From positions 1-64,000 of IMG/VR virus record IMGVR_UViG_3300042923_000601: a stretch of DNA of 64,000 nt; one strand, given 5' to 3'. Positions 5,914-27,951 of the stretch are shown here, in pieces. A model generated the notes under the pieces. That model ran no database searches, had not been told where the DNA came from, and worked only from the letters and a program-made list of their open reading frames with translations. The stretch's first letter is position 1; each line of letters starts with the position of its first letter. Both the position numbers and the translations under genes were made by a program.

Positions 5914-6888
5914 CTAAACGGCGGAGGTATTTTTTATCGCAACGGATTGTCGGAAATCGTCCGGCCCAAACCCGCACTCTGGGAAGCAGTATACTGCCAT
6001 ATCATAGACAGACTTGAATATTGTGCGAGTAGGTCTTAGCATATTAGCAGACTGCAATCCATTAAATGACATCACTCGACGGATGGCATTTCGAGATGAT
6101 ATACCCTTACGCTCATATACATAATATCGGATACACATCTTTGCGCGTTCCTTTGCGGCTAGAACATCATTTTCATTATATTCTGACATGGTCCAAAATG
6201 ACGATGGGAGCTTTCCTCGTTTCCCTTCTAAAAGCTCTTTGTATATTGGGATCACATCACCGGAGTGCAGCATGTCATTAACATCAGCTGTGATATCTCT
6301 ACCGGCTTTGAACATCGCAACATCGAACTGGTATTCAGGAAATACGAATGAAAACATTGAATACAGCGTATCCCGCCCTGGATAGAGTCTGCGATATGCT
6401 ACATATGCACCCCAAATCCTATTCTCTCGAAGGAATATTACTTTGTCTGGGATGTTGTGAATTCCGCGTAGGTCTAGGTTTAAACGATCATGGATAACAG
6501 CCCGTACGTTGTGTTTGATCGTTTCAGGTGTCCAGTAATCTCTAGGACATCGCGGCATGTCAAGAGGCTGGATATCTAAGTCATCCACGCAGTAAGTAAG
6601 CAGTTCGATCATCGTGTGGAATACTTTACTCACCTCACCTGACAATCCAGATGCCAGTTTAATCTGCCGTAGTTGAGAGATGTCCAGCGCTGCAATTTCA
6701 GCTTTTGTCATTGGATTATACACAAATACATACCACCGGAAACAGATGCGATATCTCATTTTAGAATTCACATCATCCGGTGACCAGTATCCTTTGGGGA
6801 ACTGTTTCCGTGCTCCACTTAACACATCTCTGTACACTTTAATAATTTCTTCTTCACGATTGTCAAACTTGTTTGGGTCAACCATCAT
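5914..6888 (-). CDS. DUF4046-like repeat protein
   Basis: Two copies of the pattern: IIKVYRDVLSGARKQFPKGYW and IPIYKELLEGKRGKLPSSFW. Confidence 0.6.
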   Translation of the reverse strand: MMVDPNKFDNREEEIIKVYRDVLSGARKQFPKGYWSPDDVNSKMRYRICFRWYVFVYNPMTKAEIAALDISQLRQIKLASGLSGEVSKVFHTMIELLTYCVDDLDIQPLDMPRCPRDYWTPETIKHNVRAVIHDRLNLDLRGIHNIPDKVIFLRENRIWGAYVAYRRLYPGRDTLYSMFSFVFPEYQFDVAMFKAGRDITADVNDMLHSGDVIPIYKELLEGKRGKLPSSFWTMSEYNENDVLAAKERAKMCIRYYVYERKGISSRNAIRRVMSFNGLQSANMLRPTRTIFKSVYDMAVYCFPECGFGPDDFRQSVAIKNTSAV

Positions 6889-6925
6889 GCATACCTCCGT
6901 TATAGTAGGAATCGTTGTTCATATT

Positions 6926-6935
6926 TATGATATGT
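6926..6935 (-). promoter_or_regulatory. Putative early promoter (AYATATNAY class)
   Basis: ACATATCATA 38 nt before the 6888 start; leader ends CCTACTATAACGGAGGT. Confidence 0.6.
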
Positions 6936-6976
6936 AGTTGTAACATTGGCTTTTTACATGTAAAAAGAGAACCCCA

Positions 6977-8038
6977 TTAAGGGTTCTCTACAGGTTCATA
7001 ACGCTGGAGCATCAGTTGACTACGAATGTGTCTAGGCTCATGATTCATCACCCTCGATTGATCAGTAAACCATGAGTGTGGAAGACCAAGATATTCCATG
7101 GAGCCTTCGATATAAATAATCCCTGATGGTGCGTTCTTACTAAGAAGACTTTCAAGTTCATCATCCGTCAGGTCATAGAATGTATCATCCCATTTTAAGG
7201 AGTTGCGAATGAAGTTCTCCGCGTCCCATGCGTCGGAACGGTTTTCGGAGTATGCTGCCGCTGACGTGATAACCCTAAACGAATAACTACCGTCGTTAGC
7301 TGCACGTGCCTTGAACGATCCCATGTTCTTACATGATAACTGAGACAACCAGAACACGTTTTTATTGAACTCGACATCATTGTAGAAATGAACCGGGAAG
7401 TGGAGCTTGTCGGAGTACTCAAGCATCTCTGTGTTATTGCGTGGGATAAATGGAGACGCGATTTTATTCCCTAGTGTCTTATTATACTTATAGCGCCATG
7501 GATGTTCAGGGTCTGACCCGTTTTGAAGGGAGGGTTGCATATATGCAGGTAGATATCGCATCGTGTCTTCCAGTAACTCAAGCTTATGATTTGTATTTGC
7601 GCGATTCATGTCCATTAGACATATACCGCTTCGAACTGAGCCGAATAAATGAACCCATGACAATAATGCCAATGAAGACGTCACTCGACGCTGCTGACGA
7701 ACAGACACCAAATATTGATCCTGATTCTTCAGGGCGACATAGAAACTGGCCAGGTTCATTCGATTAAGCTCGAACCGACTCGGTCCTCCACAGTCAGGCA
7801 CGTATACACATTCCCGGAAATAGTACCATGGATTGATCGTACACTCCAGCATAATGCGCTGCCGCATTTCAGGTGACAGATTTGGATCGTGCGGGTCAAC
7901 ACCTTTCAACTTCCGATCGTACAATCTCAGGTGGAAATCAGAATTTTTGATCCCCAATTGTTGCTTAAGCAGATAAGCCAATTTAAGGAACGACGTGTTA
8001 GTAGTGGTATAATCTATGATGTAAGGTTTGCTTGGCAT
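6977..8038 (-). CDS. Terminase large-subunit ATPase-domain paralog with degenerate motifs
   Basis: ATG 8038 after AAAGGAGG; aligns by eye with TerL at 62024-64000 (NPWYYFRE/NYWYFLRE, LNRMNLA/LHRGNLA, LPAYMQ/LPLYLQ); Walker A reads VRQQRRVT; no nuclease domain. Confidence 0.8.
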   Translation of the reverse strand: MPSKPYIIDYTTTNTSFLKLAYLLKQQLGIKNSDFHLRLYDRKLKGVDPHDPNLSPEMRQRIMLECTINPWYYFRECVYVPDCGGPSRFELNRMNLASFYVALKNQDQYLVSVRQQRRVTSSLALLSWVHLFGSVRSGICLMDMNRANTNHKLELLEDTMRYLPAYMQPSLQNGSDPEHPWRYKYNKTLGNKIASPFIPRNNTEMLEYSDKLHFPVHFYNDVEFNKNVFWLSQLSCKNMGSFKARAANDGSYSFRVITSAAAYSENRSDAWDAENFIRNSLKWDDTFYDLTDDELESLLSKNAPSGIIYIEGSMEYLGLPHSWFTDQSRVMNHEPRHIRSQLMLQRYEPVENP

Positions 8039-8156
8039 GGTAAAACCTCCTTTGTAAATAGGGCGATAATCGCTCATTTCTACCATGTTTACCCAATACA
8101 CTTACATACAAAAAAAGAAGACGGGCTCCCGTCTTCTTTTAAGTATTAGCCGCAAA

Positions 8157-8396
8157 TTACCCTATAATTCGTACATGATCAGACCGATATGGGAATCCCA
8201 CAGCATCCATTAGTCGAACGAACCCTGAGGTTACAAGGATGCGCCGTTTAGAGTCGTCATCCATCTTTCCCCATAATTTCTGAAGAAGGTTTCGACGGGA
8301 AGTACTTTCCTTTGTAAAAACACTCGGTTCTCTGACCAGTACTGACACAAATAACTGGTAAATCTCATCTTGATCAAATTCTTCAGCCATAAACAC
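8157..8396 (-). CDS. Hypothetical protein
   Basis: 79-aa ORF with GGGTGG RBS, in operon. Confidence 0.55.
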   Translation of the reverse strand: MFMAEEFDQDEIYQLFVSVLVREPSVFTKESTSRRNLLQKLWGKMDDDSKRRILVTSGFVRLMDAVGFPYRSDHVRIIG

Positions 8397-8411
8397 GACC
8401 CACCCTTCTCG

Positions 8412-8807
8412 TTATCCCATTATCATGGGTAATTCAGCTATCGCATAGGCGTCATGGTCGAACATGAGCCACTGGACGCCTGTTGCTTGAGCAAATCGGT
8501 ATACGCGCATTAGGTCTTCTGGTAAACCAATTGGATCAGGGACATCAGGGTCGTCCAGTACGAGTATGGTGAATCCATACTCTGACTTTGCATAGACAAT
8601 CAACCCGGATACCCCGTCTTCCACTTCTTGACGTAACCATTCATACGTGTCGTCCGATATGTGAATTGATGATATAACCATCATTCGCTGAATGACGTTT
8701 TCGTGATCAACCGTCACAATCGGTGTGGATATACGGTGTTCCTTATAAATCTTGATCACGGGTTTCATCATCTCTTTCCGACGCGTTAGGGAAATGGGTT
8801 TCCCCAA
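8412..8807 (-). CDS. DUF5983-like hypothetical protein
   Basis: ISSIHIS...VYAKSEYGF...LPEDLMRVYRFAQATGVQWLMFDHDA..IAELP pattern; true start may be about 8770. Confidence 0.55.
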   Translation of the reverse strand: MGKPISLTRRKEMMKPVIKIYKEHRISTPIVTVDHENVIQRMMVISSIHISDDTYEWLRQEVEDGVSGLIVYAKSEYGFTILVLDDPDVPDPIGLPEDLMRVYRFAQATGVQWLMFDHDAYAIAELPMIMG

Positions 8808-8928
8808 ACTCGCTTAACGCGTCGAGGAATTCTGTCATCTGACCGGCTCTTTCCTCAGGTGTAGTGTTAGCTAACACCGTATTCCGCCGGTCAACAAGCT
8901 TCTGATACCGTTCTTCTGGTGTCGACAT
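8743..8928 (-). CDS. Hypothetical protein
   Basis: 61-aa ORF with AAGGAGGGG RBS. Confidence 0.55.
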   Translation of the reverse strand: MSTPEERYQKLVDRRNTVLANTTPEERAGQMTEFLDALSEFGETHFPNASERDDETRDQDL

Positions 8929-8945
8929 TGATTAACCCCTCCTTA

Positions 8946-9662
8946 TTAGCAGTTATCTTTAACCCATTGAATCACTTCTGGAAGTGGATTTTCAATCTCT
9001 CCTATTGCAGATGGGTTGGTTTGGACAATCATCATTTGGATTTCCAGGATGTTGCTCTCCAGTGCCTTCTCACCAGCGGGCGTTTGCGTAGCGAGATATC
9101 GCAATACTTCTAGGCATGGGTTTTGAATGTCTTCTAGATATTCCGATTCCTCACTGAGTAGCGACAGCTGTATATCATAATCCAAGTCCTTGATGGAGCC
9201 GACTATGCTCCACGCCGCGTTTTTAATTGCAAGCTGTTGCAATTCCTTAGATGGGTTTTTAACGTTTTCAATATCAGGTGGGCTTTTTTCAATTAGAACT
9301 CTTAAAACTTCAGGGGATGGATCAGGAACGTACGACAGAAGGGAGTTTTCATCCATGGATAACTCAATATATCGTATCTGTACTCGGTCGCTAGGATTTT
9401 TGATATACGCAAACACATGGTGTGGCCAACCCATTGTTCTTTCCATTGCTTCTATTAAGAAGTCATCGCTCAGATGCTCAAGCTTTTCAATGATATATCC
9501 CTCATACGGGTATTCACTGATCGATTTAAGGACAGCTTTGTGTTGAGCAGCCTCGGTTTGATTCTTAACCAATCGAAAATTCTCAACATTCTCGTCAATT
9601 ACCGCAAACTGTTCTTCTTCTGTAAGTATACCGTCACGTTTAATAATTTCAATAGCATTCAT
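8946..9662 (-). CDS. Helical repeat protein (about 24-aa I-x-N-P repeats)
   Basis: Repeats IKNPSDRVQ, VPDPSPEVL, VKNPSKELQ, IQNPCLEVL, IENPLPEVI; GGAGGT RBS. Confidence 0.75.
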   Translation of the reverse strand: MNAIEIIKRDGILTEEEQFAVIDENVENFRLVKNQTEAAQHKAVLKSISEYPYEGYIIEKLEHLSDDFLIEAMERTMGWPHHVFAYIKNPSDRVQIRYIELSMDENSLLSYVPDPSPEVLRVLIEKSPPDIENVKNPSKELQQLAIKNAAWSIVGSIKDLDYDIQLSLLSEESEYLEDIQNPCLEVLRYLATQTPAGEKALESNILEIQMMIVQTNPSAIGEIENPLPEVIQWVKDNC

Positions 9663-9698
9663 TATATTACCTCCAATTTAGTGAGTTTATTACACAGA

Positions 9699-9708
9699 TA
9701 TAATATGT
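9699..9708 (-). promoter_or_regulatory. Putative early promoter
   Basis: ACATATTATA 37 nt before the 9662 start. Confidence 0.6.
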
Positions 9709-9775
9709 AATTCATCATAGGGTTGACCTTTACATCAAAAAAAACAGAGCCATCGACGGGCCCTGTTTTATGAGG

Positions 9776-10228
9776 TTAACAATTGCTGATAAGCCATTTG
9801 ATCACTTCCGGATGTGGATTTTCAAAGAGTCCGATCACTGCTGGGTCAGTCTGAACCGCGAGTAGCTGAATCTCAGGGGTCAAGTTATCCTGTGACGCAA
9901 TTAACATCGGGTCGATTTGAGCAAGATACATCTGCACCTCAGGGCACATATTTGTAATATACGGCAGGTGCTCAGGATGATTGGCAAGAATGTCTAACTG
10001 AATGTCCTTATGTAAATCCTTGATGCAATCAATTGCCGTAGGGTCAATCTTATACACCAGTTGCTGTAATTCCTTGGACGGATTCTTGATCTTCAAGATG
10101 TCAGATAAGCTGGTTCCAATACGACTGCGGACAACGTCTGGTGATGTATATTGTATGCATCCAGACACAATACGACCCCTCTTGTTTACAGGTATTCCGT
10201 TATGATCATTAACTTCAACTGCACTCAC
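9776..10228 (-). CDS. Helical repeat protein, paralog of 8946-9662
   Basis: Shares KNPSKELQQL, IKDL..DIQL and ENP.PEVI.W...NC with the neighbour; GTG start after GGAGG. Confidence 0.75.
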   Translation of the reverse strand: MSAVEVNDHNGIPVNKRGRIVSGCIQYTSPDVVRSRIGTSLSDILKIKNPSKELQQLVYKIDPTAIDCIKDLHKDIQLDILANHPEHLPYITNMCPEVQMYLAQIDPMLIASQDNLTPEIQLLAVQTDPAVIGLFENPHPEVIKWLISNC

Positions 10229-10267
10229 CTTGGCATTCCTCCGTTATCGTTGGTTTATCTACCTATC

Positions 10268-10277
10268 TGTAATATAT
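10268..10277 (-). promoter_or_regulatory. Putative early promoter
   Basis: ATATATTACA (contains TATATTAC) 40 nt before the 10228 start. Confidence 0.6.
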
Positions 10278-10333
10278 ACCTGAAACTATGATCGACATAG
10301 AAAAGACAGAGCCCGAAGGCTCTGTCTAATCGT

Positions 10334-10534
10334 TCATTTCTTCATACGATCTTTGAGATCGCGGCAGGTGAACTCGTCACAAGTATACACATCCATACCT
10401 TCGTTATAGTAGTTAGGACCAAGTACATCATTGATCAACTGGCTAAAATGCTTTCGAAGGTTGGCGTACTGCAATAACTGTATGCCAGTATCGGATGGTG
10501 GGCTGGGTTTGTAATTCCCGATTCGTATACCCAT
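10334..10534 (-). CDS. Hypothetical protein
   Basis: 66 aa, TAGGAGGG RBS; followed by a hairpin with a C-TTCG-G loop at about 10307-10327. Confidence 0.65.
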   Translation of the reverse strand: MGIRIGNYKPSPPSDTGIQLLQYANLRKHFSQLINDVLGPNYYNEGMDVYTCDEFTCRDLKDRMKK

Positions 10535-10555
10535 TGGTATCCCTCCTAGGGTTAC

Positions 10556-13500
10556 CTACCCAATATTTACGATATTGGACAGGTAAGGATCAGATTTCTT
10601 ACGATACACTGGTCGTACACCGATCTCTTCAAGAATAGGTGTAACCAGTGACATGTTCTTATTGACCATAGTCTCTACATCCATAATCGCAAGTATCCAA
10701 TCGGGAACTTCTTCCTCAAGAGGAATGGCGATCTGGGTAATACCTGTACGGAGCTTAGGGTCTTTTAACAGCTCAACCATCCGTTCAAATTCTTCACGGT
10801 AGTCAAGGGCGATTGGGGCTAAATCCTTGGCCGACTTAATAGAAACCTTAACGGTATGAATACTATTCGGCATAGTGATATCATTATCTGGGTATAGTGC
10901 ATTCCAGACGTAGGTCGCCTTGAAGGAACCAGACTTCATTGGGTCGTCATAGGAGTCAATGGTATTCACCTTAGACTCTGTCAGAAAGTCCTTGTTACCA
11001 GACTTCACTTCACCTCTGATCTTATCCTCAAGCTTGAGCATCTTACGGAGTGCCTCCTGAATATCAACCTTATCGGTTACGATATGCTCAAAGAGGGTAT
11101 CTTCGATGTGCTTACGGACATATTTCGGCCCAAAGGACACCTTCTTAAAGTCAAAGCCTTTAATGTCGCGCTTTGGTGTTTTCATGTATTCACCTTCACG
11201 CAGGATGATTGAGTTAAGGTAACGTTTCTTGCCCGATGCCAGCAACAAGGCTGTCATGCCAAACTCGTTTTTCATCTGGTAGCTACCGAACGGATGCTTC
11301 TCAGCATTGGTATCGACTTTGAACTTGTCAAGTGCACGAGTGATCAACTCTGTCATGATGTAAGCCACTGTATTCATGGCTTTCAGTCTACGACCTTCAT
11401 CGATCTTATTTCCTTTCGATTTAGTATAGAGCACTGTATTATGAACCGGCTCCATGTACTGAGTGAAGATTTTCATCAGATCATGGATGGTGATGATATT
11501 ACTGTCGGTATCAATGACAACGACATTGTTACGACGGATATTAATCAGGCGGTCAACCCGTCCATAGTATGGATAGTTGTACTGGCAATATTCCAGAATA
11601 ATATTCGTCAATTTCTTAAGGTACTTCTCACCTTCCTGTGGTGGTTTATTTGGATTCAGGAAGAGAGGGGCATTGATGGAGAACTTGTTGATCATCTCAT
11701 GGATCAGTGGGTTCTCTTGGATAAATGCGTTCAGGTTGGACTTATAATATAAGCGATTAAGCGCCGTTTGAGGTACATGTTCCAGTAAAGCATCGAGGAT
11801 ACCTGCATCAAAGTTCTTGATCGCAGTACATTTACGCAGCAGGCGTTCACGCACATCCGACTTGGTTTTATTTGATGCCAGAATCTCACCGTCAATATAA
11901 GATACTTTCTCACTGATAATATTCTCACAATAGTGAAGAAGCTCATCCGTGTCATAGAACTGAATGGTGTCACTCAGGAAGTCCTCAAAGGTAGTCATGG
12001 CCAAAGAGATAAAGGTCTGACCCTTAGAGGTTGTAGACTGTGCGACATGGTACGAATAGAAGGTGGACGATCTCGTTCCTCCAACCCCGTACGCTGAGTT
12101 TACGTATGTCTTTACACGGTTCTGCTTCAGGTTGTACATCTTAGCATTTTCAGTATCACCGACTTTATCATACTCGATTTCGATCTTCTTCAGAACCTTA
12201 CGCTTCTTTAGGAGATTGTCAGTGATGATCAGACCCGGGCTAATTGGCCCTTCTTCGTGACGTTTGAAGAATGTACCAGATTCAGTCAGAATCGGACGCA
12301 CTTCAAGAATCCAGTCTACGATATCAAGCAGGGTCGTATTGTATTCGATATTCTCATAGCTATTAAACAGGATGCAGTCAGTGTTCTTCACATCACGCTT
12401 ATACACCCGTTTAAGGAAGGAATCGAAGTGCGACTCGCTCTCTGGGTGAATCATGCGCATAACTTTCTTCATCTTAAATGACCAGAGATCATAGAATCCA
12501 CCAAAGGATTTCTTCTTGGTAACGATCTTCGGTTCTTTGATATTCCGGTACAGAATGAACTCTTTGAGGTATTCATCTGTACGACGGAGTCCAAACCATT
12601 TAATACCCACCTTGATATAGTCACGAGTTTCGTAATCATCCACGAACTCACCACCACGAAGGTGAGGGTTAACGCTATACTCAAGCGGAGATACCCGGTC
12701 AAGGATAATCAGGCGACCATGCTGAGCAGAGTCAGACATGTTGTTCACCAGCTTAATTGATGGGTACATTGCCGTAGCATCAAGGTCAATAAGGTCAAGG
12801 AAGATGCGATTGCTCCGTTCAGTACCGAACAGCGTCGCACCCACATTGTTGATACCCGTAGGGTCACCAACAAGTGCACCTTTAAGAGTTTCTTCAAATC
12901 CACTTTCAGAGACCACATCCTCACCAGCATCTTCACCGAAGTCAAGGTAATTGGCATTGAGGTTGTTTCTCATGACTTGGCCGTTCTCAAAATGTCCAAC
13001 GTTCCACAAGTTCTTCAAGCTGACCGTTTGCCGGTTGGCTTTATCGACTTGAGTACCGGAGTCGTAACCTTTGAGGAATACGTCGTCGATATCTTCAACC
13101 TTGCGCTCAATCCCGACTTGAGACCACACGTCCACCATCGAGTAGAGAACAAAGTTTTCGTATTCTTCAAGTGCAGCGTTGATGACCGTTACACCTTTTC
13201 TGTCAAACTTACGTTTACCGAGCTTGAGTTCGATTGATGCAACGTTATCGAGGCCGTTAGAGCCAAAGTCTTGACCGCCTTTACGTCTGGCAGCATAATT
13301 CAACATTTGGTCTGTATACTTGGTGTAGGATAAGCAGTTAAAGGAGTCGCCACGGTTCTTAAAGTCACTGATAAACCGCTCGTCCACCTTATAGTACATT
13401 TCCGTTTTACCGAAGTCTGGGTGACAGAACAACGCTTTTGATGGGAGTCCCAACATCGTTGCTCTCTTGTCGATATATGGAATATCGTAGCTCATATTCC

Positions 13501-14353
13501 AGATACCGGTGAAGTCAGGCTTAAAGGCATGCTGAAGCTTAAAGATCGTCATGATCATCTCAGCTTCATCGTCATACATCATGACGTGGTAATCAGCCTT
13601 ACCGTACTTTTCATCAAATTCATCATGCAATCGCTCCATGAAGCGTGGTAGGTTACGTTCAAACTCCGCCTGCTGCTTATACCGTTTGTGATCACGGAGT
13701 AACAGGGTAAATACTTGCGGGAGTTTGACATTAGAACCCGGTGGAATATAGTCATAAATCAGCGTAACCGCTGAAATCGGGCATCTACCTGTCTCGTGAT
13801 CATACTTTGACCGACCGTAGATGTCGGTCTCGATATCGAGGTAGGACTTTGTCAGTGTGTACTTCTTAGGGTCGTAATGAAGTGCGGCTGTTGTGTACAC
13901 ATAGTCTTCGATGCCGCAGTCAGAGAAGTAGGCATGACGCCATTTGTGTACTTCTTTCCGACCATTCCACTTCCCAATCTCCTTAGCATAGTCAATCGTT
14001 TGCTTGACCTTCTTATCTTCTTCGGAGTATAGGTGATTGGAGAGTAATTTATATAGGTACCGTTCTCTCTCCTTATAGGTCACGGTATGTTTATCGAGCA
14101 GCTCGAACGGTACGGCCTCACGAGGCGTCTTCCAGTCGTGCATATGCTCTTCTTTTGTAACGTATATATCAGTCTGTGGGTTCTTGATGATTTGGAGCTT
14201 CTTTTCTCCAGTGTCGAAGTCTCGATAGACGATGAATAGTTCATCATCGGAATAGCTTCCGTCCGGCATTTTCTTTGACCGGCTGTACTGCACATTCAGG
14301 ATTAGGACATTTGCTCCTTTTTCTACCCCATGTAGTAGTGGTCTTGGGTACAT
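10556..14353 (-). CDS. Family B DNA polymerase with 3'-5' exonuclease, single 1265-aa ORF
   Basis: ExoI YLDIETD, ExoII WNMSYDIPYI, ExoIII YSMVD; polymerase motif A DLDATAMYPS, motif B KTYVNSAYG, motif C IDTDS. Confidence 0.92.
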   Translation of the reverse strand: MYPRPLLHGVEKGANVLILNVQYSRSKKMPDGSYSDDELFIVYRDFDTGEKKLQIIKNPQTDIYVTKEEHMHDWKTPREAVPFELLDKHTVTYKERERYLYKLLSNHLYSEEDKKVKQTIDYAKEIGKWNGRKEVHKWRHAYFSDCGIEDYVYTTAALHYDPKKYTLTKSYLDIETDIYGRSKYDHETGRCPISAVTLIYDYIPPGSNVKLPQVFTLLLRDHKRYKQQAEFERNLPRFMERLHDEFDEKYGKADYHVMMYDDEAEMIMTIFKLQHAFKPDFTGIWNMSYDIPYIDKRATMLGLPSKALFCHPDFGKTEMYYKVDERFISDFKNRGDSFNCLSYTKYTDQMLNYAARRKGGQDFGSNGLDNVASIELKLGKRKFDRKGVTVINAALEEYENFVLYSMVDVWSQVGIERKVEDIDDVFLKGYDSGTQVDKANRQTVSLKNLWNVGHFENGQVMRNNLNANYLDFGEDAGEDVVSESGFEETLKGALVGDPTGINNVGATLFGTERSNRIFLDLIDLDATAMYPSIKLVNNMSDSAQHGRLIILDRVSPLEYSVNPHLRGGEFVDDYETRDYIKVGIKWFGLRRTDEYLKEFILYRNIKEPKIVTKKKSFGGFYDLWSFKMKKVMRMIHPESESHFDSFLKRVYKRDVKNTDCILFNSYENIEYNTTLLDIVDWILEVRPILTESGTFFKRHEEGPISPGLIITDNLLKKRKVLKKIEIEYDKVGDTENAKMYNLKQNRVKTYVNSAYGVGGTRSSTFYSYHVAQSTTSKGQTFISLAMTTFEDFLSDTIQFYDTDELLHYCENIISEKVSYIDGEILASNKTKSDVRERLLRKCTAIKNFDAGILDALLEHVPQTALNRLYYKSNLNAFIQENPLIHEMINKFSINAPLFLNPNKPPQEGEKYLKKLTNIILEYCQYNYPYYGRVDRLINIRRNNVVVIDTDSNIITIHDLMKIFTQYMEPVHNTVLYTKSKGNKIDEGRRLKAMNTVAYIMTELITRALDKFKVDTNAEKHPFGSYQMKNEFGMTALLLASGKKRYLNSIILREGEYMKTPKRDIKGFDFKKVSFGPKYVRKHIEDTLFEHIVTDKVDIQEALRKMLKLEDKIRGEVKSGNKDFLTESKVNTIDSYDDPMKSGSFKATYVWNALYPDNDITMPNSIHTVKVSIKSAKDLAPIALDYREEFERMVELLKDPKLRTGITQIAIPLEEEVPDWILAIMDVETMVNKNMSLVTPILEEIGVRPVYRKKSDPYLSNIVNIG

Positions 14354-15767: not shown

Positions 15768-15797
15768 AAAAAGAGAGGGGCGATGCCTCTCTCTTTT
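15766..15797. terminator. Bidirectional terminator
   Basis: AAAAAAAGAGAGGGG-CGATG-CCTCTCTCTTTT between convergent stop codons. Confidence 0.75.
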
Positions 15798-16261
15798 CAC
15801 CCGAATCTTACAATACCCCGAGGTGTGCGAATACCATTAACCAGACTGGAATCACGTTTGAAGGTGAATACTTCATAGCCGGTTCTGGATAGGAATGTTC
15901 TATTCTTTTCATTATCTGTAAGCACCCAGTTCGCAGCCATACTAACGAACTCTGCAACAGGACCTTCTATAAAGAGCATATCATCACATTCTTGCGTGGT
16001 TACTTTGATATCGCCGCATTCTATGTAAAATAAGAGACGCTTTAAGTCATTAACTGAGAAGGTGAAACGATCTGGGTAGGCCGACTGCTTGAAATGTGCG
16101 ACAAGAGTTTCAAATACAGTAGGTACCCATGACTCAACAGCGTTACGGGTTTGGACGTACGTGTCTTTCCATTCAACCGTATGGGTAAAGACGTCCGAAC
16201 CGAATCGAACTGTGCATCCAAATGTAACGCCATAGTGATTGTGCATCATAATATCAAACAT
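15797..16261 (-). CDS. Hypothetical protein
   Basis: Start revised to ATG 16261 (CGGAGGT RBS, promoter cassette upstream). Confidence 0.7.
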   Translation of the reverse strand: MFDIMMHNHYGVTFGCTVRFGSDVFTHTVEWKDTYVQTRNAVESWVPTVFETLVAHFKQSAYPDRFTFSVNDLKRLLFYIECGDIKVTTQECDDMLFIEGPVAEFVSMAANWVLTDNEKNRTFLSRTGYEVFTFKRDSSLVNGIRTPRGIVRFG

Positions 16262-16315
16262 GTCAACTACCTCCGATATAGTGGGAATATGAGTACGGTT
16301 ATGCTCATTCGTGAT

Positions 16316-16349
16316 TATGATATATACCCACCGGACAGAAAAATTACGG
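16316..16349 (-). promoter_or_regulatory. Bipartite early promoter
   Basis: CCGTAA-N18-ATATATCATA, 55 nt before the 16261 start. Confidence 0.7.
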
Positions 16350-16384
16350 TTAAAAGGAGAACCCATTTAAGGGTTCTCCATTGT

Positions 16385-17137
16385 TTAGTCAAAACCTTTG
16401 ACGGTTTTGAATCCAAGTTGTTTCACCGCGTCAGCATCCCAGGATTCATCAATATGCATACACCAAACCTTTGATCGAAGAGACTTCGGAATCAGCCGAG
16501 ATAACTCTTCCAATGGCAGGTGTACATAACCGTTATATGAGAACGACTGGGTGTCTTGATAGATGTAGTCCAACTCATCCGACCGCAACATTCGCAGGAT
16601 CACAGGCGGAATCGACCGGCTGTCCCCACTGTAATAAACCTTAGAGCCTTTAAAGAAGTCGATGAACTCGAAGAGGTATCCATAACATACTTTCAAGTCG
16701 TCATCATGCTCAGTACGAACCGGTGTTACGATGATCCGTCCCAGCTTCTCGCCAATGGTGACGATATTGCGATGACCGCCAAGGTCAAGTCGAACCAAAT
16801 TATACAACGTACTCTTGACACCCATGACATGGAATAAGTTGAGTACAGATTGGGTGTCAGGTGTGTATATGGTAACACCCGGACGGAACGCTCTATCTTT
16901 ATAATACATATTGAAAATCAGAGTGCCGAGACTTCCGACGTGATCGGGGTGAAAATGGGTAATGAATACGTGCACGTGACTTATACCCTGAAGTACATTA
17001 TACCGTTTCAGTCGATCATATGTAGTTTCACCACAATCGATCATGAATAGGTCCTTATCATCAGGGAATTTTAAGTACGCGCCGTTATTACCCAAGCGTG
17101 TGTTAAAAGCTGATCCAGTGCCAATAAATGATAACAT
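16385..17137 (-). CDS. MBL-fold metallo-hydrolase (RNase Z/Apyc1-like)
   Basis: Start ATG 17137 after GGAGG; IGTGSAF, IDCG, THFHPDHVGS (HxHxDH), YSGDS, WCMH. Confidence 0.88.
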   Translation of the reverse strand: MLSFIGTGSAFNTRLGNNGAYLKFPDDKDLFMIDCGETTYDRLKRYNVLQGISHVHVFITHFHPDHVGSLGTLIFNMYYKDRAFRPGVTIYTPDTQSVLNLFHVMGVKSTLYNLVRLDLGGHRNIVTIGEKLGRIIVTPVRTEHDDDLKVCYGYLFEFIDFFKGSKVYYSGDSRSIPPVILRMLRSDELDYIYQDTQSFSYNGYVHLPLEELSRLIPKSLRSKVWCMHIDESWDADAVKQLGFKTVKGFD

Positions 17138-17224
17138 TGATAATTCCTCCCATACGAATTTATCTAATGTACGGGAAATAATTATAAAAAAAGAGAGGTT
17201 GCCGAAGCAACCCCTCACGTAATG

Positions 17225-17626: not shown

Positions 17627-17902
17627 TTACTGAACACCTCCTTGAATTTGTACGGGCTGTGTTTCTACGATATTACAGTTACGAGCGGCCTTCATCTGAT
17701 CATACTCACGCAGGTCATTGATTACTGCGACGGTCTGATCATGGTATGCCCGAATAGGGCATGCTTTACAGCTGCCATCAAAATTAATACCACGGGTAGT
17801 GCAGATATTGCAGGATACTTTAAATGCCTGCACTGCCTCACCGATAGTAGAGCAGTCCTGTTGAGCCTGAATTGCGATAGTCTGGAATTTAGTTTCGTAC
17901 AT
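17627..17902 (-). CDS. Small Cys-rich protein
   Basis: CNIC and CKAC pairs; CGGAGGT RBS. Confidence 0.7.
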   Translation of the reverse strand: MYETKFQTIAIQAQQDCSTIGEAVQAFKVSCNICTTRGINFDGSCKACPIRAYHDQTVAVINDLREYDQMKAARNCNIVETQPVQIQGGVQ

Positions 17903-17972
17903 AATAAAATACCTCCGATGTAGTAGGGTTATGTAAACGAATCACCTACAACGTAGGGTCCATTTACATGAT

Positions 17973-18006
17973 TATGATATATAGTCGCTACCACAAAAAA
18001 TTACGG
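17973..18006 (-). promoter_or_regulatory. Bipartite early promoter
   Basis: CCGTAA-N18-ATATATCATA. Confidence 0.7.
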
Positions 18007-18048
18007 AAGTAAATCCCGGGCCACGCCATAGGCGCTCCCGGGTATGAT

Positions 18049-22827: not shown

Positions 22828-22834
22828 TTATAGT

Positions 22835-23561: not shown

Positions 23562-23566
23562 TATGA

Positions 23567-23595: not shown

Positions 23596-23596
23596 G

Positions 23597-24554: not shown

Positions 24555-24582
24555 TGTAACAACCTCCTATATAATATATGAA

Positions 24583-25188
24583 TTACAATCCGGCAAGTTT
24601 CTTGAACTCATCAGATGGATAAAAGTGTACCTGGTAAGTCTCGTCCTCAGTTAAAATATCTTCAACCTTAACTATGCGGTATTCACCTTCATTAGGCACC
24701 TCAATAGTCATGATTTCTTCATCCGAAATGGCCTCATAAATACCAGTGACAATTGCTTCATCATGGATAAATGCCAAATACGCGGCTCTCTCCGGCGTGA
24801 TTTCAAAATCGATCGCTGCCATTCGAATCGCACCGGTGTACATATTGTCAATATACTCATCCGGGTTTCCATATTCGTATATCAGTTCATTAAGTAAATG
24901 CTCATCATCCACATCAAGCAGATCATGCCGAACGGTAACGACCAAATGATCAGCGCTGGTTGGTAGATGATACTCCAGTAGAGGCGTTTTGAATGTTACT
25001 TTATGGCTACCGGCTGGGATCATGATCTTATTATAGCCACCGAACGTCACTGCAAGCCCCTTTGACGTTGCCTTTTGTAACGTCCCATAGACTTCTAACG
25101 GAGGGTGGTTACCAAGAAGTGTGTCCATGATGAACAGATTTGCCATTCTCGACATAAACGTTTCCGTGTACCACGGGGGTGTTGTCAT
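24583..25188 (-). CDS. Hypothetical protein, paralog family A
   Basis: Start revised to ATG 25188 (AAGGAG RBS); ends EVPNEGEYRIV...HFYPSDEFK. Confidence 0.75.
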   Translation of the reverse strand: MTTPPWYTETFMSRMANLFIMDTLLGNHPPLEVYGTLQKATSKGLAVTFGGYNKIMIPAGSHKVTFKTPLLEYHLPTSADHLVVTVRHDLLDVDDEHLLNELIYEYGNPDEYIDNMYTGAIRMAAIDFEITPERAAYLAFIHDEAIVTGIYEAISDEEIMTIEVPNEGEYRIVKVEDILTEDETYQVHFYPSDEFKKLAGL

Positions 25189-25264
25189 TTCAGGATTCTC
25201 CTTTTTAGTCAAGTAGTTCGGGCTAAAAATCAGTTTAAGCATCATATACCTCCAACTGGCTGAC

Positions 25265-25960
25265 CTATTTAAAGTCAGCCATATTCTTAAACTCATCGGA
25301 TGGGTAAAACCGAATGTCGTATTCAATATCATCCAGAGTAGAATCAAAGCCCGGCATAACTTGATATTCACCTTCATCTGGTACAGAGATTACTTTCTTG
25401 AAATCAGATGAATTTATGATCTCTGCAATCCGGTTGACGAGTATAACGTCATGTATGATCGCGAGAACCGATAGGTTCTCCGGAGTAGCATATACACCCG
25501 GGACTGATAAGCCAATAGCAGTTAGGTATAAACTGTCCGTATAATCTTCCGGTTCACAATACATCTCCAGCATCTCATTGAGCGTATCCATGTTATACCG
25601 GTATTCAAGAACATCCGATATCACTTTAACGGTCATATATTCCGTTCCGGCTGAAGGCATTTTGTATTCGAAATGCGGAGTTGCAAACACAAACGCCTGT
25701 TTATCAACGTCCTCATTCCCTACTTTCTTACAGATACGATCTACTAGTTGCTGGTGTTGACCGATCGCGGTCGCAAGGCCGGTTGTCACGGCAGACTGTA
25801 ATTTAGAGCATAGTGCCACCCGCCCCTTATCATCGGGCGGCGGGCTGTCCAGTATACTCCAAAGACTATCTGTGAATCGCATAGTGTAATCAGAATTCAT
25901 CATCTCCTTATTTTTCTTTTTACCAGATTTGTATTTTGGGTTAATAATCAATCTAAACAT
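25265..25960 (-). CDS. Hypothetical protein, paralog family A
   Basis: GGAGGTG RBS; ends SVPDEGEYQVM...DIRFYPSDEFK. Confidence 0.75.
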   Translation of the reverse strand: MFRLIINPKYKSGKKKNKEMMNSDYTMRFTDSLWSILDSPPPDDKGRVALCSKLQSAVTTGLATAIGQHQQLVDRICKKVGNEDVDKQAFVFATPHFEYKMPSAGTEYMTVKVISDVLEYRYNMDTLNEMLEMYCEPEDYTDSLYLTAIGLSVPGVYATPENLSVLAIIHDVILVNRIAEIINSSDFKKVISVPDEGEYQVMPGFDSTLDDIEYDIRFYPSDEFKNMADFK

Positions 25961-25974
25961 AGAACACCTCCAAG

Positions 25975-26307
25975 TTATTTATTTGTAACTACAGCAGGGA
26001 TATCGAATTTCATGATATCACCAGCGACACATAAACTCATGAGTTCTAAAAACTGACGTGCGAAACGATATTCAGCAGGTGGTAATTGGGTGTCACCCAT
26101 TAAGTATTCAACAACTTTATCCTTCACAGCTGAGAGTACACCACGGGTTAGTACAAGCTGAGCCCCTTTAGTGGTCTCGTGATTAGCAGGTGAGCCTGAT
26201 CCACCATCTATGAATAGATACTGTACCAGTCTATCAAAGTATTCGCTTTTCAAAGCAGATAATGTCTCTACGATTTCCCCATTTCTAATGATAATAAATG
26301 CTTTCAT
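25975..26307 (-). CDS. Hypothetical protein
   Basis: 110 aa with GGGGT RBS and promoter motif upstream. Confidence 0.65.
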   Translation of the reverse strand: MKAFIIIRNGEIVETLSALKSEYFDRLVQYLFIDGGSGSPANHETTKGAQLVLTRGVLSAVKDKVVEYLMGDTQLPPAEYRFARQFLELMSLCVAGDIMKFDIPAVVTNK

Positions 26308-26344
26308 GAACGCTACCCCCGGATCGGTTAGTATGATTCACTAC

Positions 26345-26354
26345 TATAATATAT
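26345..26354 (-). promoter_or_regulatory. Putative early promoter
   Basis: ATATATTATA 38 nt before the 26307 start. Confidence 0.55.
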
Positions 26355-26482
26355 ATTTCCATTTACCTGTATATGCCGTGCAAAAAAAATAATTGCTTTT
26401 TAATAGGTTGTACAGAAAGGCAAAAATAATTGAAGGATCATAGAGAAAGGAGGCGGATTTCCGCCTCCCACTCTGTGTCCTA

Positions 26483-27064
26483 TTATCTTGCGTCTTGTAC
26501 CTCACCTTGGAATTCTTGGGTAGCACCAGCTGCTTCCTCTGAGAATGCGGCGGCTTCGTCACCCAGTTCGAGTCCGGCGGTTTTGATAACAACAGTGTTC
26601 AGTTTCTTAGTAAGTTCAATGAGCGATTCCTTAAGAGGTTCAACCACGCGTTCAACCATAGGTTTAACGGTATGGAACACCGCTTTCAATCCACCAAGCA
26701 TGATCGCAAGTTTGAACTTGTTCTTCTCAGTGAAGTCAACCACAACGTCAACCATTTCATCTGTGATGTCCAGCATCATCATAATGAAGTCTTCACTGTA
26801 TTCCAGAGTGACGAGGACTGCATCGTTCTCGCCATCCTCAACACTTAGGGAGATACTACCAGCCATCGACCCAGGCAGTTCAGCGAAAGCAGCTGTGGTA
26901 GCCTCGACCCATACAAGAACATCTTCCTTTGTAACTTCGCCTTCGAACGCAGGGAAGATTGGAACGTTGATCTCGTCGTCGATGGTTTTGTTGATGGCGG
27001 CGACGATCCGGTTATTCAGTACCACGATGCGATTGATTTCTTTCAGGGATGCTGTCAGTTTCAT
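26483..27064 (-). CDS. Acidic hypothetical protein
   Basis: 193 aa with CGGAGGT RBS, own promoter cassette and downstream terminator. Confidence 0.75.
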   Translation of the reverse strand: MKLTASLKEINRIVVLNNRIVAAINKTIDDEINVPIFPAFEGEVTKEDVLVWVEATTAAFAELPGSMAGSISLSVEDGENDAVLVTLEYSEDFIMMMLDITDEMVDVVVDFTEKNKFKLAIMLGGLKAVFHTVKPMVERVVEPLKESLIELTKKLNTVVIKTAGLELGDEAAAFSEEAAGATQEFQGEVQDAR

Positions 27065-27120
27065 AATTAATTACCTCCGATATAGTGGGTGTATGATATA
27101 GGTTTGTACCTATTCGTGAT

Positions 27121-27154
27121 TATGATATATAGCCGGATATTGAAGAAATTACGG
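27121..27154 (-). promoter_or_regulatory. Bipartite early promoter
   Basis: CCGTAA-N18-ATATATCATA, then ATCACGAAT and a hairpin leader. Confidence 0.7.
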
Positions 27155-27159
27155 AAAGA

Positions 27160-27393
27160 TTAGCGGGCGGATTCAGTACGCATTACCCGCATGATATTTT
27201 GACGCATCGGCCCATTAACTGTACAGGTACCGTTGCATCTTGTGCACTTAGCCTGAGTGTCATAGCCAGGAACCATACGTAAAAGAGTCTCGCCTTTACG
27301 ATTGTAGTGATAGCAGCCTTGATATAGTACAGCATGTTTATACCAGTTACCTAAGCTTTGAATAATGGCTTTCGTTGGTTTTGATCTCTTCAT
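27160..27393 (-). CDS. Small C/H zinc-finger-like protein
   Basis: CYH...G..LL..VPG....AKCTRC; CGGAGGT RBS. Confidence 0.65.
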   Translation of the reverse strand: MKRSKPTKAIIQSLGNWYKHAVLYQGCYHYNRKGETLLRMVPGYDTQAKCTRCNGTCTVNGPMRQNIMRVMRTESAR

Positions 27394-27421
27394 TTTAGTT
27401 ACCTCCGATATAGTATAATTC

Positions 27422-27826
27422 TTAGCGCTTATGTTTATGACGACCCGGGCTGCTATCCATAAGAGACTTTACGTGAGGGAGAACTTCCGTCTCCAAAATT
27501 TCAAGCGCATGGATGATATGCTCAGGAATGTGGCCATACCCTACATGACAGGCCCGAATTTCACTAGATATTGTACGCATCATATTAACGGTATCATCCA
27601 GATGATCTTCAATATGCGCCACATCGATCAGAACTTCAGCGCCACACTTCCCGCATATTGCCATAAGAGGATTACTACCTGCAACTGGTTGCAGAAGACT
27701 CTTCCCTTTCTTTTTAATATGACAACATGGACGAACCCGTTCAGGCGCGCCCTCAATAGTAACAGCTGCATCGTCATATTTCAAGATAATTTCCTTTACA
27801 CCTTTAATATCCAACTTCTTTTCCAT
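27422..27826 (-). CDS. C/H zinc-finger-like protein, paralog of 27160-27393
   Basis: CCH...G..LL..VAG....AICGKC. Confidence 0.7.
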   Translation of the reverse strand: MEKKLDIKGVKEIILKYDDAAVTIEGAPERVRPCCHIKKKGKSLLQPVAGSNPLMAICGKCGAEVLIDVAHIEDHLDDTVNMMRTISSEIRACHVGYGHIPEHIIHALEILETEVLPHVKSLMDSSPGRHKHKR

Positions 27827-27880
27827 TCTAATTACCTCCGTTATAGTAGGATTCTGAATAAGCTTGTGCTTATTCGTGAT

Positions 27881-27914
27881 TATGATATGTAGTCGATTCT
27901 AAAGAAAATTACGG
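27881..27914 (-). promoter_or_regulatory. Bipartite early promoter
   Basis: CCGTAA-N18-ACATATCATA, then ATCACGAAT and a hairpin leader. Confidence 0.7.
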
Positions 27915-27951
27915 AAACGCGCAAGCAAAAAATAGGAGACAATGAGGTCTC

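What the first reader, a model, noticed from the sequence alone, without database searches (positions are those of the whole stretch)
6888..27918. Repeated promoter-hairpin-RBS cassettes that could shuffle gene modules
Cassettes of about 90-100 bp recur before genes starting at 16261, 27064 and 27826, with partial copies at 6888, 17902 and 27393. They read CCGTAATTT...AYATATCATAATCACGAAT, then a hairpin, then CYACTATAWCGGAGGT. The stems differ but still pair (ATAGGT-ACAA-ACCTAT; GAATAAGC-ACAA-GCTTATTC; ATGAG...CTCAT), which argues for selected structure. This resembles the promoter-early stem-loop elements that drive modular shuffling in T4-type phages; I know of no such report for this phage group.
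Basis: partly seen in the sequence, partly recalled or inferred. Interest (0 to 1): 0.7.

Follow-up and report, generated by a model that had tools for sequence, protein, structure and literature searches.

The report
Repeated early promoter-leader cassettes, jumbo phage
The repeated 90-base cassettes are real: they are copies of a jumbo phage's own early promoter plus a hairpin-capped leader and ribosome site placed before small unknown genes, and whether they also help swap those genes is suggested but not shown.

Summary
Observation confirmed. On the minus strand, five near-full cassettes exist in the 246,689-bp genome. Four are in the window, with start codons at 16261, 17902, 27064 and 27826; the fifth is at about 104,602. 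A hairpin-less copy lies at 6888 and an RBS-box-only copy at 27393.

The genome is a soil-metagenome jumbo phage distantly related to Bacillus phage AR9, with two beta-like and two beta'-like RNA polymerase ORFs. The cassette promoter, TATATATCAT-N6-G, fits the mapped AR9 virion-RNA-polymerase early promoter, TATATATTAT-N6-G(+1). About 35 other genes in this genome carry the same motif.

With that start site, the hairpins sit at +1 of the transcript. They are stable in four of five copies, with two compensatory pairs but weak statistics. They are not terminators.

The PeSL comparison holds by analogy only: there is no sigma-70 promoter, the stem-loop is not in the promoter, and circles are untestable. 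Cargo genes do vary. One cassette-plus-gene is absent from a ~61-72% (protein-level) relative. A ~90% relative differs from the hairpin onward at 16261 and lacks detectable cargo between 27064 and 27826. Other replacements occur away from cassettes.

Verdict: a new variant of a known promoter class, of moderate interest.

The parts
27824..27914 (-). Full cassette before the 134-aa ORFan (27422-27826). CCGTA box 27910-27914; core TACATATCAT 27882-27891; predicted +1 G at 27875; 5'-terminal hairpin GAATAAGC-ACAA-GCTTATTC 27856-27875; CCTACTATAAC box; GGAGG 27835-27839; ATG 27824-27826. A rho-independent terminator lies upstream at 27931-27956.
27062..27154 (-). Full cassette before the 193-aa ORFan (26483-27064). 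CCGTA 27150-27154; core TATATATCAT 27122-27131; predicted +1 at 27115; hairpin GAATAGGT-ACAA-ACCTAT(A)TC 27095-27115; GGAGG 27074-27078; ATG 27062-27064. No terminator upstream: it follows directly on the 77-aa gene.
16259..16349 (-). Full cassette before the 154-aa ORFan (15797-16261). CCGTA 16345-16349; core 16317-16326; predicted +1 at 16310; weak, register-shifted hairpin 16289-16308; GGAGG 16270-16274; ATG 16259-16261. Upstream terminator at 16356-16379.
17900..18006 (-). Full cassette before the 91-aa ORFan (17627-17902). CCGTA 18002-18006; core 17974-17983; predicted +1 at 17967; 35-nt two-tier hairpin 17933-17967; CCCTACTACATC box; GGAGG 17912-17916; ATG 17900-17902. A terminator-like hairpin lies upstream at about 18015-18042.
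6886..6959 (-). Hairpin-less relative of the cassette before the 324-aa gene (5914-6888, DUF4046). ATGTA variant of the upstream box 6955-6959; core TACATATCAT 6927-6936; predicted +1 at 6920; 22-nt leader with CCTACTATAAC; GGAGG 6894-6898; ATG 6886-6888. The upstream terminator at 6967-6988 resembles the one at 16356-16379.
27391..27414 (-). RBS box only (ACTATATCGGAGGT, then ATG) between the 134-aa and 77-aa genes. No promoter and no hairpin.
15797..16261 (-). Cargo gene of cassette 16261 (154 aa, no Pfam or PHROG family). It is only 51% identical in relative L004 and absent from L005. It is not detected in X3 at 80% or more.
27160..27826 (-). Two ORFans (134 aa and 77 aa, both Cys-rich) bracketed by the direct-repeat cassettes 27826 and 27064. 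No coverage in the ~90% relative X3.

Best explanation
Each cassette is a complete early expression unit of an AR9-like jumbo phage. The five copies are paralogues of one another.

The parts, in order:
1. An upstream CCGTA(A/T)3 box at -39 to -31.
2. The AT-rich core TATATATCAT at -16 to -7. By homology with AR9, this is read by the phage's injected (virion) multisubunit RNA polymerase.
3. A start at the G six bases downstream.
4. A short stem-loop that begins at or within two bases of the 5' end of the transcript.
5. A CCYACTAT box 6-8 nt ahead of a strong GGAGG Shine-Dalgarno sequence, followed by the start codon of a small gene of unknown function.

Shown here: the repeats and their extent; the match to the AR9 early consensus; the fixed spacing of the upstream box here and in AR9; the presence of two sets of RNA polymerase subunit genes; the predicted folds; and the link between the ACTA box and early-promoter genes.

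Inferred: that the virion polymerase uses these sites early in infection, and that transcription starts at the predicted G. Also inferred, as the most likely role of the 5'-terminal hairpin, is protection of these mRNAs from 5'-end-dependent decay. In a Bacillota host that would be RNase J1 or RNase Y, as established for 5' stem-loops such as those of aprE and ermC. Together with the strong SD this would give high early expression.

The cassettes probably spread by duplication or recombination of the roughly 90-bp unit. As repeats, they may also serve as occasional crossover points.
For: - **Promoter motif.** AR9 early promoters mapped by dRNA-seq and primer extension are AAATATATATTAT-(6N)-G+1 and are read by the virion RNAP (PMC5312081). 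TATATATYAT-N6-G occurs 9 times in the window against 0.13 expected. Genome-wide there are about 35 sites followed within 70 nt by an SD and an ORF, nearly all with G at the predicted +1. The same motif precedes genes in the distant 257-kb relative L006. In AR9 it occurs 26 times against 1 in the control, coinciding with annotated early promoters.
- **Polymerases.** The genome has two beta-like and two beta'-like RNAP ORFs. One beta-like gene sits behind such a promoter (81303), as expected for an early non-virion RNAP gene.
- **Phage group.** The DNA polymerase is nearest to AR9, PBS1 and related phages.
- **Upstream box.** CCGTA lies exactly 23 nt (start to start) before the core in 12 promoters; every other spacing occurs at most once. 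Five lie in the window against 0 expected. AR9 has seven at the identical spacing against 0 in the control.
- **Not a sigma-70 promoter.** The sigma-70 scan does not pick up the cassettes and shows no enrichment.
- **Hairpins.** Four of five are stable and start at +1. RNAalifold gives the same 8-bp stem with two compensatory pairs. Unrelated +1 hairpins occur at other early promoters: 32909, 72647, 81303 and 140671.
- **ACTA box.** It lies 6-8 nt before the SD in 27 of 40 early-promoter genes against 26 of 156 others.
- **Terminators.** Canonical terminators lie upstream of four of five cassettes, so each is a separate transcription unit.
- **Paralogy.** Leaders 27826 and 104602 differ at 3 of 56 positions although they lie 77 kb apart before unrelated genes.
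Against: - No transcript data exist. The phage is known only from soil and silage metagenomes.
- The cassette core has C where AR9 has T at position 8. The AR9 paper reports that the virion RNAP tolerates deviations poorly. This C (or G) is, however, strongly tied to the CCGTA box: 8 of 9 against 5 of 30, p = 1.6e-4, a figure inflated by paralogy. It recurs in relatives and, by the design of the search pattern, in the IMG/VR matches.
- The last six bases of the core sit where a sigma-A -10 hexamer would sit, so use by the host polymerase is not excluded by sequence alone.
- 5'-terminal hairpins are only modestly enriched among early leaders: 7 of 33 against 9% background (p = 0.027), or 5 of 30 when paralogues are collapsed (p = 0.13). 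Most early leaders are short and unstructured.
- The 16261 stem is weak, and the copy at the same position in L004 carries a mismatch.
- The stabiliser role rests on knowledge of Bacillota mRNA decay, and the host itself is inferred.
Confidence: 0.7

Rival explanations
1. The cassettes work like PeSLs. As ~90-bp direct repeats they are preferred sites of homologous recombination, which inserts, deletes and swaps the early ORFans behind them. This role would come on top of their role in expression.
For: - All copies are direct repeats on one strand, and four cluster within 12 kb among ORFans.
- The relative L005 goes straight from the Apyc1-like gene to the convergent 420-aa gene. It lacks both cassette 16261 and its cargo.
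- In X3 (~90% identity), similarity after the Apyc1-side promoter stops at +4. X3 continues with the 27064-type hairpin, and the cargo is not detected. X3 shows a different C-terminus.
- L004 also has a 27064-type hairpin at this locus, and its cargo is only 51% identical while the flanking genes are 80-94% identical.
- X3 shows no coverage of the two genes between cassettes 27064 and 27826. It carries a 27826-type cassette in front of a gene start not found in this genome.
- The positional counterpart in L004 is no closer to 16261 (70%) than to 27064 (77%), which is compatible with exchange among copies.
Against: - Other replacements between the window and L005 lie inside operons with no cassette: 192/204 aa against 206 aa, and 133 aa against 140+138 aa. 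The 5.2-kb block at 5400-10550 is bounded by gene ends, not by cassettes.
- The 16261 cargo has a cassette on one side only.
- Three of five cassettes keep their cargo in X3.
- The X3 data are short k-mer contigs that break at the repeats.
- No chimeric junction or circle was observed or could be searched for.
Confidence: 0.27
2. The promoters are host sigma-A (sigma-70 type) early promoters, as in T4 or SPO1, and are not read by a phage polymerase.
For: TATTAT or TATCAT occupies -12 to -7 relative to the predicted start and matches TATAAT at 5 of 6 positions (sequence).
Against: - There is no -35 hexamer at 16-18 bp spacing, and the consensus scan does not list the cassettes.
- Conservation extends four more bases upstream of the hexamer and includes a fixed G at +1, exactly as in AR9. 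There, early transcription needs no new protein synthesis and is assigned to the virion RNAP.
- The genome encodes two multisubunit RNAPs.
Confidence: 0.08
3. The hairpin and leader are an operator for an RNA-binding regulator, such as a translational repressor or a nuclease that shuts these early genes off together. On this view it is not a passive stabiliser.
For: - The loop ACAA recurs in three copies, and as ACTA in L004.
- Leader sequence, not only structure, is nearly identical between 27826 and 104602.
- The ACTA box is specific to early leaders.
- The AR9 authors also noted an unexplained motif in early 5' UTRs.
Against: - Sequence identity can equally reflect recent duplication.
- Other early leaders carry unrelated +1 hairpins or none.
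- No candidate protein was identified.
Confidence: 0.15

Closest known systems
Early (virion-RNAP) promoters of Bacillus phage AR9 / PBS1 (Lavysh et al. 2017, PMC5312081)
   Same: An AT-rich decamer TATATATTAT centred near -10 with a G start 6 nt downstream. Dozens of copies precede early operons. The genome carries two multisubunit RNAPs. An optional CGTA(T/A) box lies 23 nt upstream of the core at identical spacing.
   Different: - The cassette copies have C at core position 8.
- The A-tract that precedes the AR9 core is absent.
- A whole 36-51-nt leader with a +1 hairpin and a CCYACTAT box is duplicated along with the promoter.
- The AR9 leaders inspected show no such hairpins.
- The upstream box is not mentioned in the text of the AR9 paper.
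PeSL (promoter-early stem-loop) cassettes of T4-type phages (Arbiol et al. 2010, PMC2839356; Comeau et al. 2014, PMC4122927)
   Same: Roughly 100-bp repeated regulatory cassettes that end in an SD and a start codon. They precede ORFans in variable regions, are associated with terminators, and show some cargo differences between relatives that begin at the cassette.
   Different: - PeSLs use sigma-70-like -35/-10 promoters.
- Their stem-loop sits between or over the promoter hexamers and acts as a terminator.
- Recombination and mini-circles were shown experimentally for PeSLs.
- Here the promoter is of the phage-RNAP type, the stem-loop is transcribed at +1 and lacks a U-tract, the terminators are separate and mostly unrelated in sequence, and recombination is not shown.
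5'-terminal stabiliser stem-loops of bacterial mRNAs (e.g. B. subtilis aprE and ermC leaders, E. coli ompA; from established knowledge)
   Same: A stem that begins within 0-2 nt of the 5' end, followed by a strong SD.
   Different: The stems here are short (6-8 bp in the main type) and have not been tested. The host and its RNases are inferred.

Membership tests
AR9-type virion-RNAP early promoter | Conserved AT-rich core TATATATTAT centred near -10 | tested here: met
   The cassettes carry TATATATCAT or TACATATCAT, one or two deviations. About 30 other sites carry the exact core.
AR9-type virion-RNAP early promoter | Transcription start at a G 6 nt downstream of the core | tested here: inconclusive
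   A G is present at that position in all five cassettes and in nearly all genome-wide sites. No RNA data exist to map 5' ends.
AR9-type virion-RNAP early promoter | Phage encodes virion and non-virion multisubunit RNA polymerases | tested here: met
   There are two beta-like ORFs (79508-80548 and 169006-169536) and two beta'-like ORFs (234349-234456 and 146115-146513). The beta' hits and one beta hit fall below Pfam cut-offs. Which set is packaged in the virion is unknown.
AR9-type virion-RNAP early promoter | Early transcription that is independent of the host RNAP and of new protein synthesis | not testable with these tools
   The phage is uncultured and metagenomic.
PeSL (T4-type promoter-early stem-loop) | Strong sigma-70-like promoter with -35 and -10 hexamers and an AT-rich upstream region | tested here: not met
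   No -35 hexamer. The consensus scan does not list the cassettes, and the region shows no enrichment: 39 found against 33.5 expected.
PeSL (T4-type promoter-early stem-loop) | Stem-loop placed between or over the promoter hexamers and acting as a terminator or attenuator | tested here: not met
   The stem-loop lies at +1 to +21, downstream of the predicted start, with no U-tract. Separate terminators lie upstream of four of five copies.
PeSL (T4-type promoter-early stem-loop) | Cassette ends in an SD and a start codon and precedes ORFans in variable regions | tested here: met
   Each cassette ends in GGAGG plus ATG. The cargo proteins have no Pfam or PHROG family. The region is mosaic compared with L005.
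PeSL (T4-type promoter-early stem-loop) | Indels and replacements between close relatives bounded by the cassettes | tested here: inconclusive
   Two of five loci differ from the cassette onward in X3, and one cassette-plus-gene is absent from L005. Other replacements lie away from cassettes, and the X3 data are fragmentary contigs.
PeSL (T4-type promoter-early stem-loop) | Recombination between flanking cassettes yields mini-circles | not testable with these tools
   Only assembled contigs of the runs are held, not raw reads.
5'-terminal mRNA stabiliser stem-loop | Stable stem beginning within a few nt of the 5' end | tested here: met
   Given the predicted start, the stems begin at +1 in 27826, 27064, 17902 and 104602, with energies of -6.1 to -14 kcal/mol. 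Copy 16261 is weak.
5'-terminal mRNA stabiliser stem-loop | Lengthens mRNA half-life | not testable with these tools
   Needs an experiment.

The most novel reading that the evidence does not exclude
AR9-like jumbo phages possess their own analogue of PeSLs. These would be mobile ~90-bp early-expression cassettes built on a distinct subclass of virion-RNAP promoter, with a -39 CCGTA box and C or G at core position 8, plus a +1 hairpin leader. They would be exchanged among loci and would carry early ORFans in and out of the genome by recombination at the cassette.
Probability: 0.25. Interest if true: 0.55.

Novelty: new variant of a known kind. Interest (0 to 1): 0.4.

Why it matters
- **Annotation.** The result places an uncultured soil jumbo phage in the AR9 transcription scheme. 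It gives a ready map of about 35 early promoters and the genes they drive.
- **A lead on promoter recognition.** Some virion-RNAP promoters have a second, fixed upstream element (CCGTA at -39), conserved between this phage and AR9. How virion RNAPs recognise promoters without a known sigma-like factor is still open, so a bipartite promoter subclass offers a concrete handle for biochemistry.
- **A design idea.** The hairpin-capped leaders suggest compact early-expression cassettes for Bacillota phage engineering.
- **Gene shuffling.** The idea would matter for how jumbo phages turn over their early ORFans, which may include host-takeover or anti-defence genes. It remains unproven.

Tried and rejected
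- **Megablast of 15 kb against GenBank phages:** no match.
- **DNA polymerase as a query in IMG/VR:** no close relative.
- **Exact promoter 18-mer in IMG/VR:** three hits; the one read (L001) lies in an unrelated context, and no related cassette turned up.
- **Bipartite promoter pattern in IMG/VR and JGI metagenomes:** 157 matches. Only nine, from one distantly related lineage, are followed by an SD and a start.
- **RBS-box pattern in IMG/VR:** no match had a promoter core upstream; no related cassette found.
- **Homologue searches:** the 193-aa cargo found only itself, and the 812-aa neighbour found nothing. The region between cassettes 27064 and 27826 could therefore not be compared in assembled relatives.
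- **Rfam at a permissive threshold over 5-30 kb:** nothing.
- **Pfam, PHROGs and ESM Atlas on cargo proteins:** no convincing family. The atlas hits are below useful thresholds and the models have low confidence.
- **Hairpin as intrinsic terminator:** rejected. There is no U-tract and it lies after the start site.
- **Hairpin as RNase III site:** rejected. The stems are 6-8 bp.
- **ACTAT box as extended anti-SD pairing:** rejected by inspection against the Bacillus 16S 3' end (from my own knowledge).
- **ACTAT box as an AR9-type late promoter (AACA-N6-TA/G):** does not fit.
- **Apyc1-like gene in the 17902 operon:** I first assumed it was, but a terminator at 17193-17216 separates them. I make no claim either way.
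- **First test of +1 hairpin enrichment:** with a loose criterion it was not significant, p = 0.15.

Full report
**What is there**

The genes in this region run on the minus strand, so the cassettes are read as reverse complement. In that sense each unit reads:

(terminator) - CCGTAATTT - 14 nt - TAYATATCAT - AATCAC - G AAT... hairpin ... CCYACTATAWC - GGAGG - 7-9 nt - ATG

Both conserved boxes occur far more often than chance allows. The RBS box gives 12 hits against 0.7 expected, and the promoter box 5 against 0.1.

The window is the first 64 kb of a single 246,689-bp contig with 44.6% G+C. A profile built from the copies finds exactly five full cassettes in that genome, at 16259-16352, 17901-18009, 27063-27158, 27824-27919 and 104593-104686. 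All are on the minus strand. Two partial copies also exist. One at 6891-6940 lacks the hairpin. One at 27392-27424 is the RBS box alone, between two cistrons.

Pairwise identity over 87 nt is 72-83%. The leaders of 27826 and 104602 differ at only 3 of 56 positions. Yet they lie 77 kb apart in front of unrelated genes, and their flanks are unrelated.

**Whose genome**

No GenBank phage matches at the DNA level. The 1265-aa family-B DNA polymerase (10556-14353) is closest, at about 30% identity, to the polymerases of Bacillus phages AR9 and PBS1, the Staphylococcus jumbo phages and Yersinia phiR1-37.

The genome carries two beta-like and two beta'-like RNA polymerase ORFs. This is the hallmark of jumbo phages with one virion and one non-virion multisubunit RNAP.

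The sequence comes from a soil metagenome. A near-identical copy sits in a second soil run, and a ~90% relative in a silage run. Homologues of the neighbouring MBL-fold hydrolase are mostly from Bacillota and Bacillus phages. With the strong GGAGG ribosome sites, this suggests a Bacillota host, which is an inference.

**The promoter**

AR9 early promoters were mapped by dRNA-seq and primer extension. Their consensus is AAATATATATTAT-(6N)-G+1. They are used without new protein synthesis, so they are assigned to the injected virion RNAP (PMC5312081).

This genome has the same motif. TATATATYAT-N6-G occurs 9 times in the window against 0.13 expected. About 35 sites genome-wide are followed within 70 nt by an SD and an ORF, and nearly all have G at the predicted start. 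One of them precedes a beta-like RNAP gene, as expected for an early non-virion polymerase gene.

The motif also precedes genes in a distant 257-kb relative, L006. In AR9 itself it occurs 26 times against 1 in the control, coinciding with annotated early promoters.

A sigma-70-type scan neither lists the cassettes nor shows any enrichment in the region. I therefore read the cassette promoter, TATATATCAT-AATCAC-G, as a member of this class. Transcription would start at window positions 27875, 27115, 16310 and 17967.

**The upstream box**

CCGTA lies exactly 23 nt (start to start) before the core in 12 promoters, and every other spacing occurs at most once. Five lie in the window against 0 expected.

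AR9 has seven early promoters with (C)CGTAT at the identical spacing, against 0 in the control. So do L006 and a distantly related IMG/VR lineage. The text of the AR9 paper does not mention this box.

In this genome the box goes with a non-T base at core position 8: 8 of 9 against 5 of 30, p = 1.6e-4. Paralogy among the cassettes inflates that figure. The cassettes therefore belong to a promoter subclass, which may be a separate regulatory or strength class.

**The hairpin**

With the predicted start, the stems begin at +1 in four copies:

| Copy | Stem | Energy (kcal/mol) | z |
|---|---|---|---|
| 27826 | GAAUAAGC-ACAA-GCUUAUUC | -9.7 | -6.2 |
| 104602 | as 27826, with one G.U pair | -7.6 | -2.9 |
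| 27064 | GAAUAGGU-ACAA-ACCUAU(A)UC | -6.1 | -2.95 |
| 17902 | 35-nt two-tier stem | -14 | -3.05 |
| 16261 | register-shifted | -3.1 | -1.5 |

On six aligned leaders (four from this genome, plus L004 and L005), RNAalifold predicts the same 8-bp stem. 87.5% of cells pair, against 18-56% when the partners are slid. Two pairs change on both sides: A-U to G-C, and C-G through U.G to U-A. Only 11 of 500 shuffles reach the observed pairing, and 51 of 500 reach the covariation score. That supports a selected structure but is not strong.

Unrelated +1 hairpins occur at other early promoters: 32909, 72647, 81303 and 140671. Overall enrichment is modest: 7 of 33 against 9% in random windows (p = 0.027), or 5 of 30 with paralogues collapsed (p = 0.13). 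The signal is sharpest at the predicted start and the base before it.

Most early leaders are short (15-22 nt) and unstructured. The long leaders look like the short type with a 5' hairpin added. For example, L005's counterpart of 17902 has no hairpin.

The stems have no U-tract, and real terminators lie upstream of four of five cassettes, so they are not terminators. A stem at the very 5' end followed by a strong SD is the arrangement known to protect mRNAs from 5'-end-dependent decay in Bacillus. That is my preferred reading. It is inferred, not shown.

**The RBS box**

ACTA lies 6-8 nt before the SD in 27 of 40 genes with an early promoter, against 26 of 156 others. It also occurs without a promoter at 27393, and after a different hairpin at 114491 and 115186. 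It is anchored to the SD rather than to the start site. Its role is unknown. The AR9 authors also reported an unexplained motif in early 5' UTRs.

**Does it shuffle genes?**

The cargo genes are ORFans.

*Relative L005* (a 27.7-kb contig, proteins 61-72% identical):
- The Apyc1-like gene runs straight into the convergent 420-aa gene. Cassette 16261 and its cargo are absent.
- It also lacks the 5.2-kb block at 5400-10550, which here holds at least three early units (promoters at 10278, 9709 and 6936).
- It has different genes at two places inside operons, with no cassette at those junctions.

*Relative L004* (~75% nt identity):
- It has the cassette, but with a 27064-type hairpin carrying one mismatch.
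- Its cargo is only 51% identical, while the flanking genes are 80-94% identical.

*Silage relative X3* (~90% nt identity):
- Cassettes 17902, 27064 and 104602 keep their cargo.
- After the Apyc1-side promoter, similarity stops at +4. X3 continues with the perfect 27064-type hairpin.
- The 154-aa cargo is not detected, and the gene in its place ends differently.
- There is no coverage of the two ORFans between cassettes 27064 and 27826.
- A 27826-type cassette leads into a gene start not found in this genome.

The X3 contigs end at -12 and +18 of the cassettes. That is the 30-nt overlap expected if the assembly graph used 31-mers (my assumption), which would mean the repeats themselves break the graph. 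Adjacency cannot be read from these contigs, and holes prove nothing.

Taken together, the cassettes sit at variable spots, and at least one replacement begins inside a cassette. Plasticity here does not need cassettes, however, and no recombinant junction was seen.

**Comparison with PeSLs**

PeSLs are sigma-70-type early promoters. Their stem-loop lies between or over the hexamers and terminates upstream transcription. Recombination between them and the resulting mini-circles were shown by experiment (PMC2839356, PMC4122927).

Here the promoter type and the position and role of the stem-loop both fail those criteria. The shared features are a ~100-bp repeat, an SD-ATG end, ORFan cargo and a variable region. 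So this may work like a PeSL at the level of genome evolution, but it is not one.

**Verdict**

The promoter-hairpin-RBS reading is supported and sharpened to an AR9-type early promoter subclass with a -39 box and a +1 hairpin leader. The shuffling role is plausible at about one chance in four. This is a new variant of a known kind, of moderate interest.

Noticed in passing
window 16385-17137 (-): MBL-fold hydrolase whose closest homologues carry Pfam PF23023 (Anti-Pycsar Apyc1). It is likely a cyclic-nucleotide-degrading anti-defence gene. The ORF list gives a 277-aa reading, but relatives and an upstream terminator at 17193-17216 point to a 250-aa gene starting at 17137.
   Followed up: partly
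window 16345-16349, 18002-18006, 27150-27154, 27910-27914, 29367-29371 (-); also AR9 (KU878088.1), e.g. 39689, 56740, 139387: A CCGTA / CGTAT box lies at a fixed 23-nt distance upstream of the early promoter core. It is shared by this phage, AR9, L006 and an IMG/VR lineage. The text of the AR9 transcriptome paper does not mention it. Here it is linked to C or G at core position 8.
   Followed up: yes
window 5400-10550 (-): A 5.2-kb block of about eight small genes, with at least three early promoters (10278, 9709, 6936), lies between the DNA polymerase gene and the next conserved gene. It is absent from relative L005, where the two conserved genes are adjacent.
   Followed up: partly
window 10556-14353 (-): The family-B DNA polymerase is one 1265-aa ORF here and in L005. 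In AR9 the matching parts are annotated as separate genes (g132 and g152), and tblastn gives two places per record.
   Followed up: no
genome 113768-115900 (+), outside the window: The RBS boxes at 113796, 114491 and 115186 are spaced exactly 695 nt apart, suggesting three tandem paralogous genes (not checked). The second and third are preceded by a GGTGAGGGG...CTCCTCACC hairpin and the ACTATATAGGAGGA box, with no promoter.
   Followed up: no
genome 118531-118590 and 119131-119190 (+), outside the window: Two early promoters 600 nt apart share the same 45 nt of upstream sequence, which includes the end of a terminator-like stem and its T-run. This looks like a recent tandem duplication of a terminator-promoter unit.
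   Followed up: no
genome 111138-111200, outside the window: Back-to-back divergent early promoters (TATATATGAT on both strands) whose CCGTA boxes overlap in a near-palindromic 60-bp intergenic region.
   Followed up: no
genome 140689-144051 (-), outside the window; L006 13902-16283: A 1040-aa early gene behind promoter 144103 is 69% identical by tblastx (over an ~830-nt stretch) to the L006 gene carrying polyphosphate kinase domains. Both jumbo phages therefore seem to encode a PPK-like enzyme.
   Followed up: no
window 1484-3235 (-): Homologue (49% identity) of an L005 protein with a Cpn60/TCP1 chaperonin domain, i.e. a phage-encoded GroEL-like chaperonin.
   Followed up: no
window 6967-6988 and 16356-16379: The two terminators upstream of promoter 6936 and cassette 16261 are near-copies of each other (GAGAACCC-loop-GGGTTCTC). 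At these two loci the repeat therefore extends into the terminator.
   Followed up: partly
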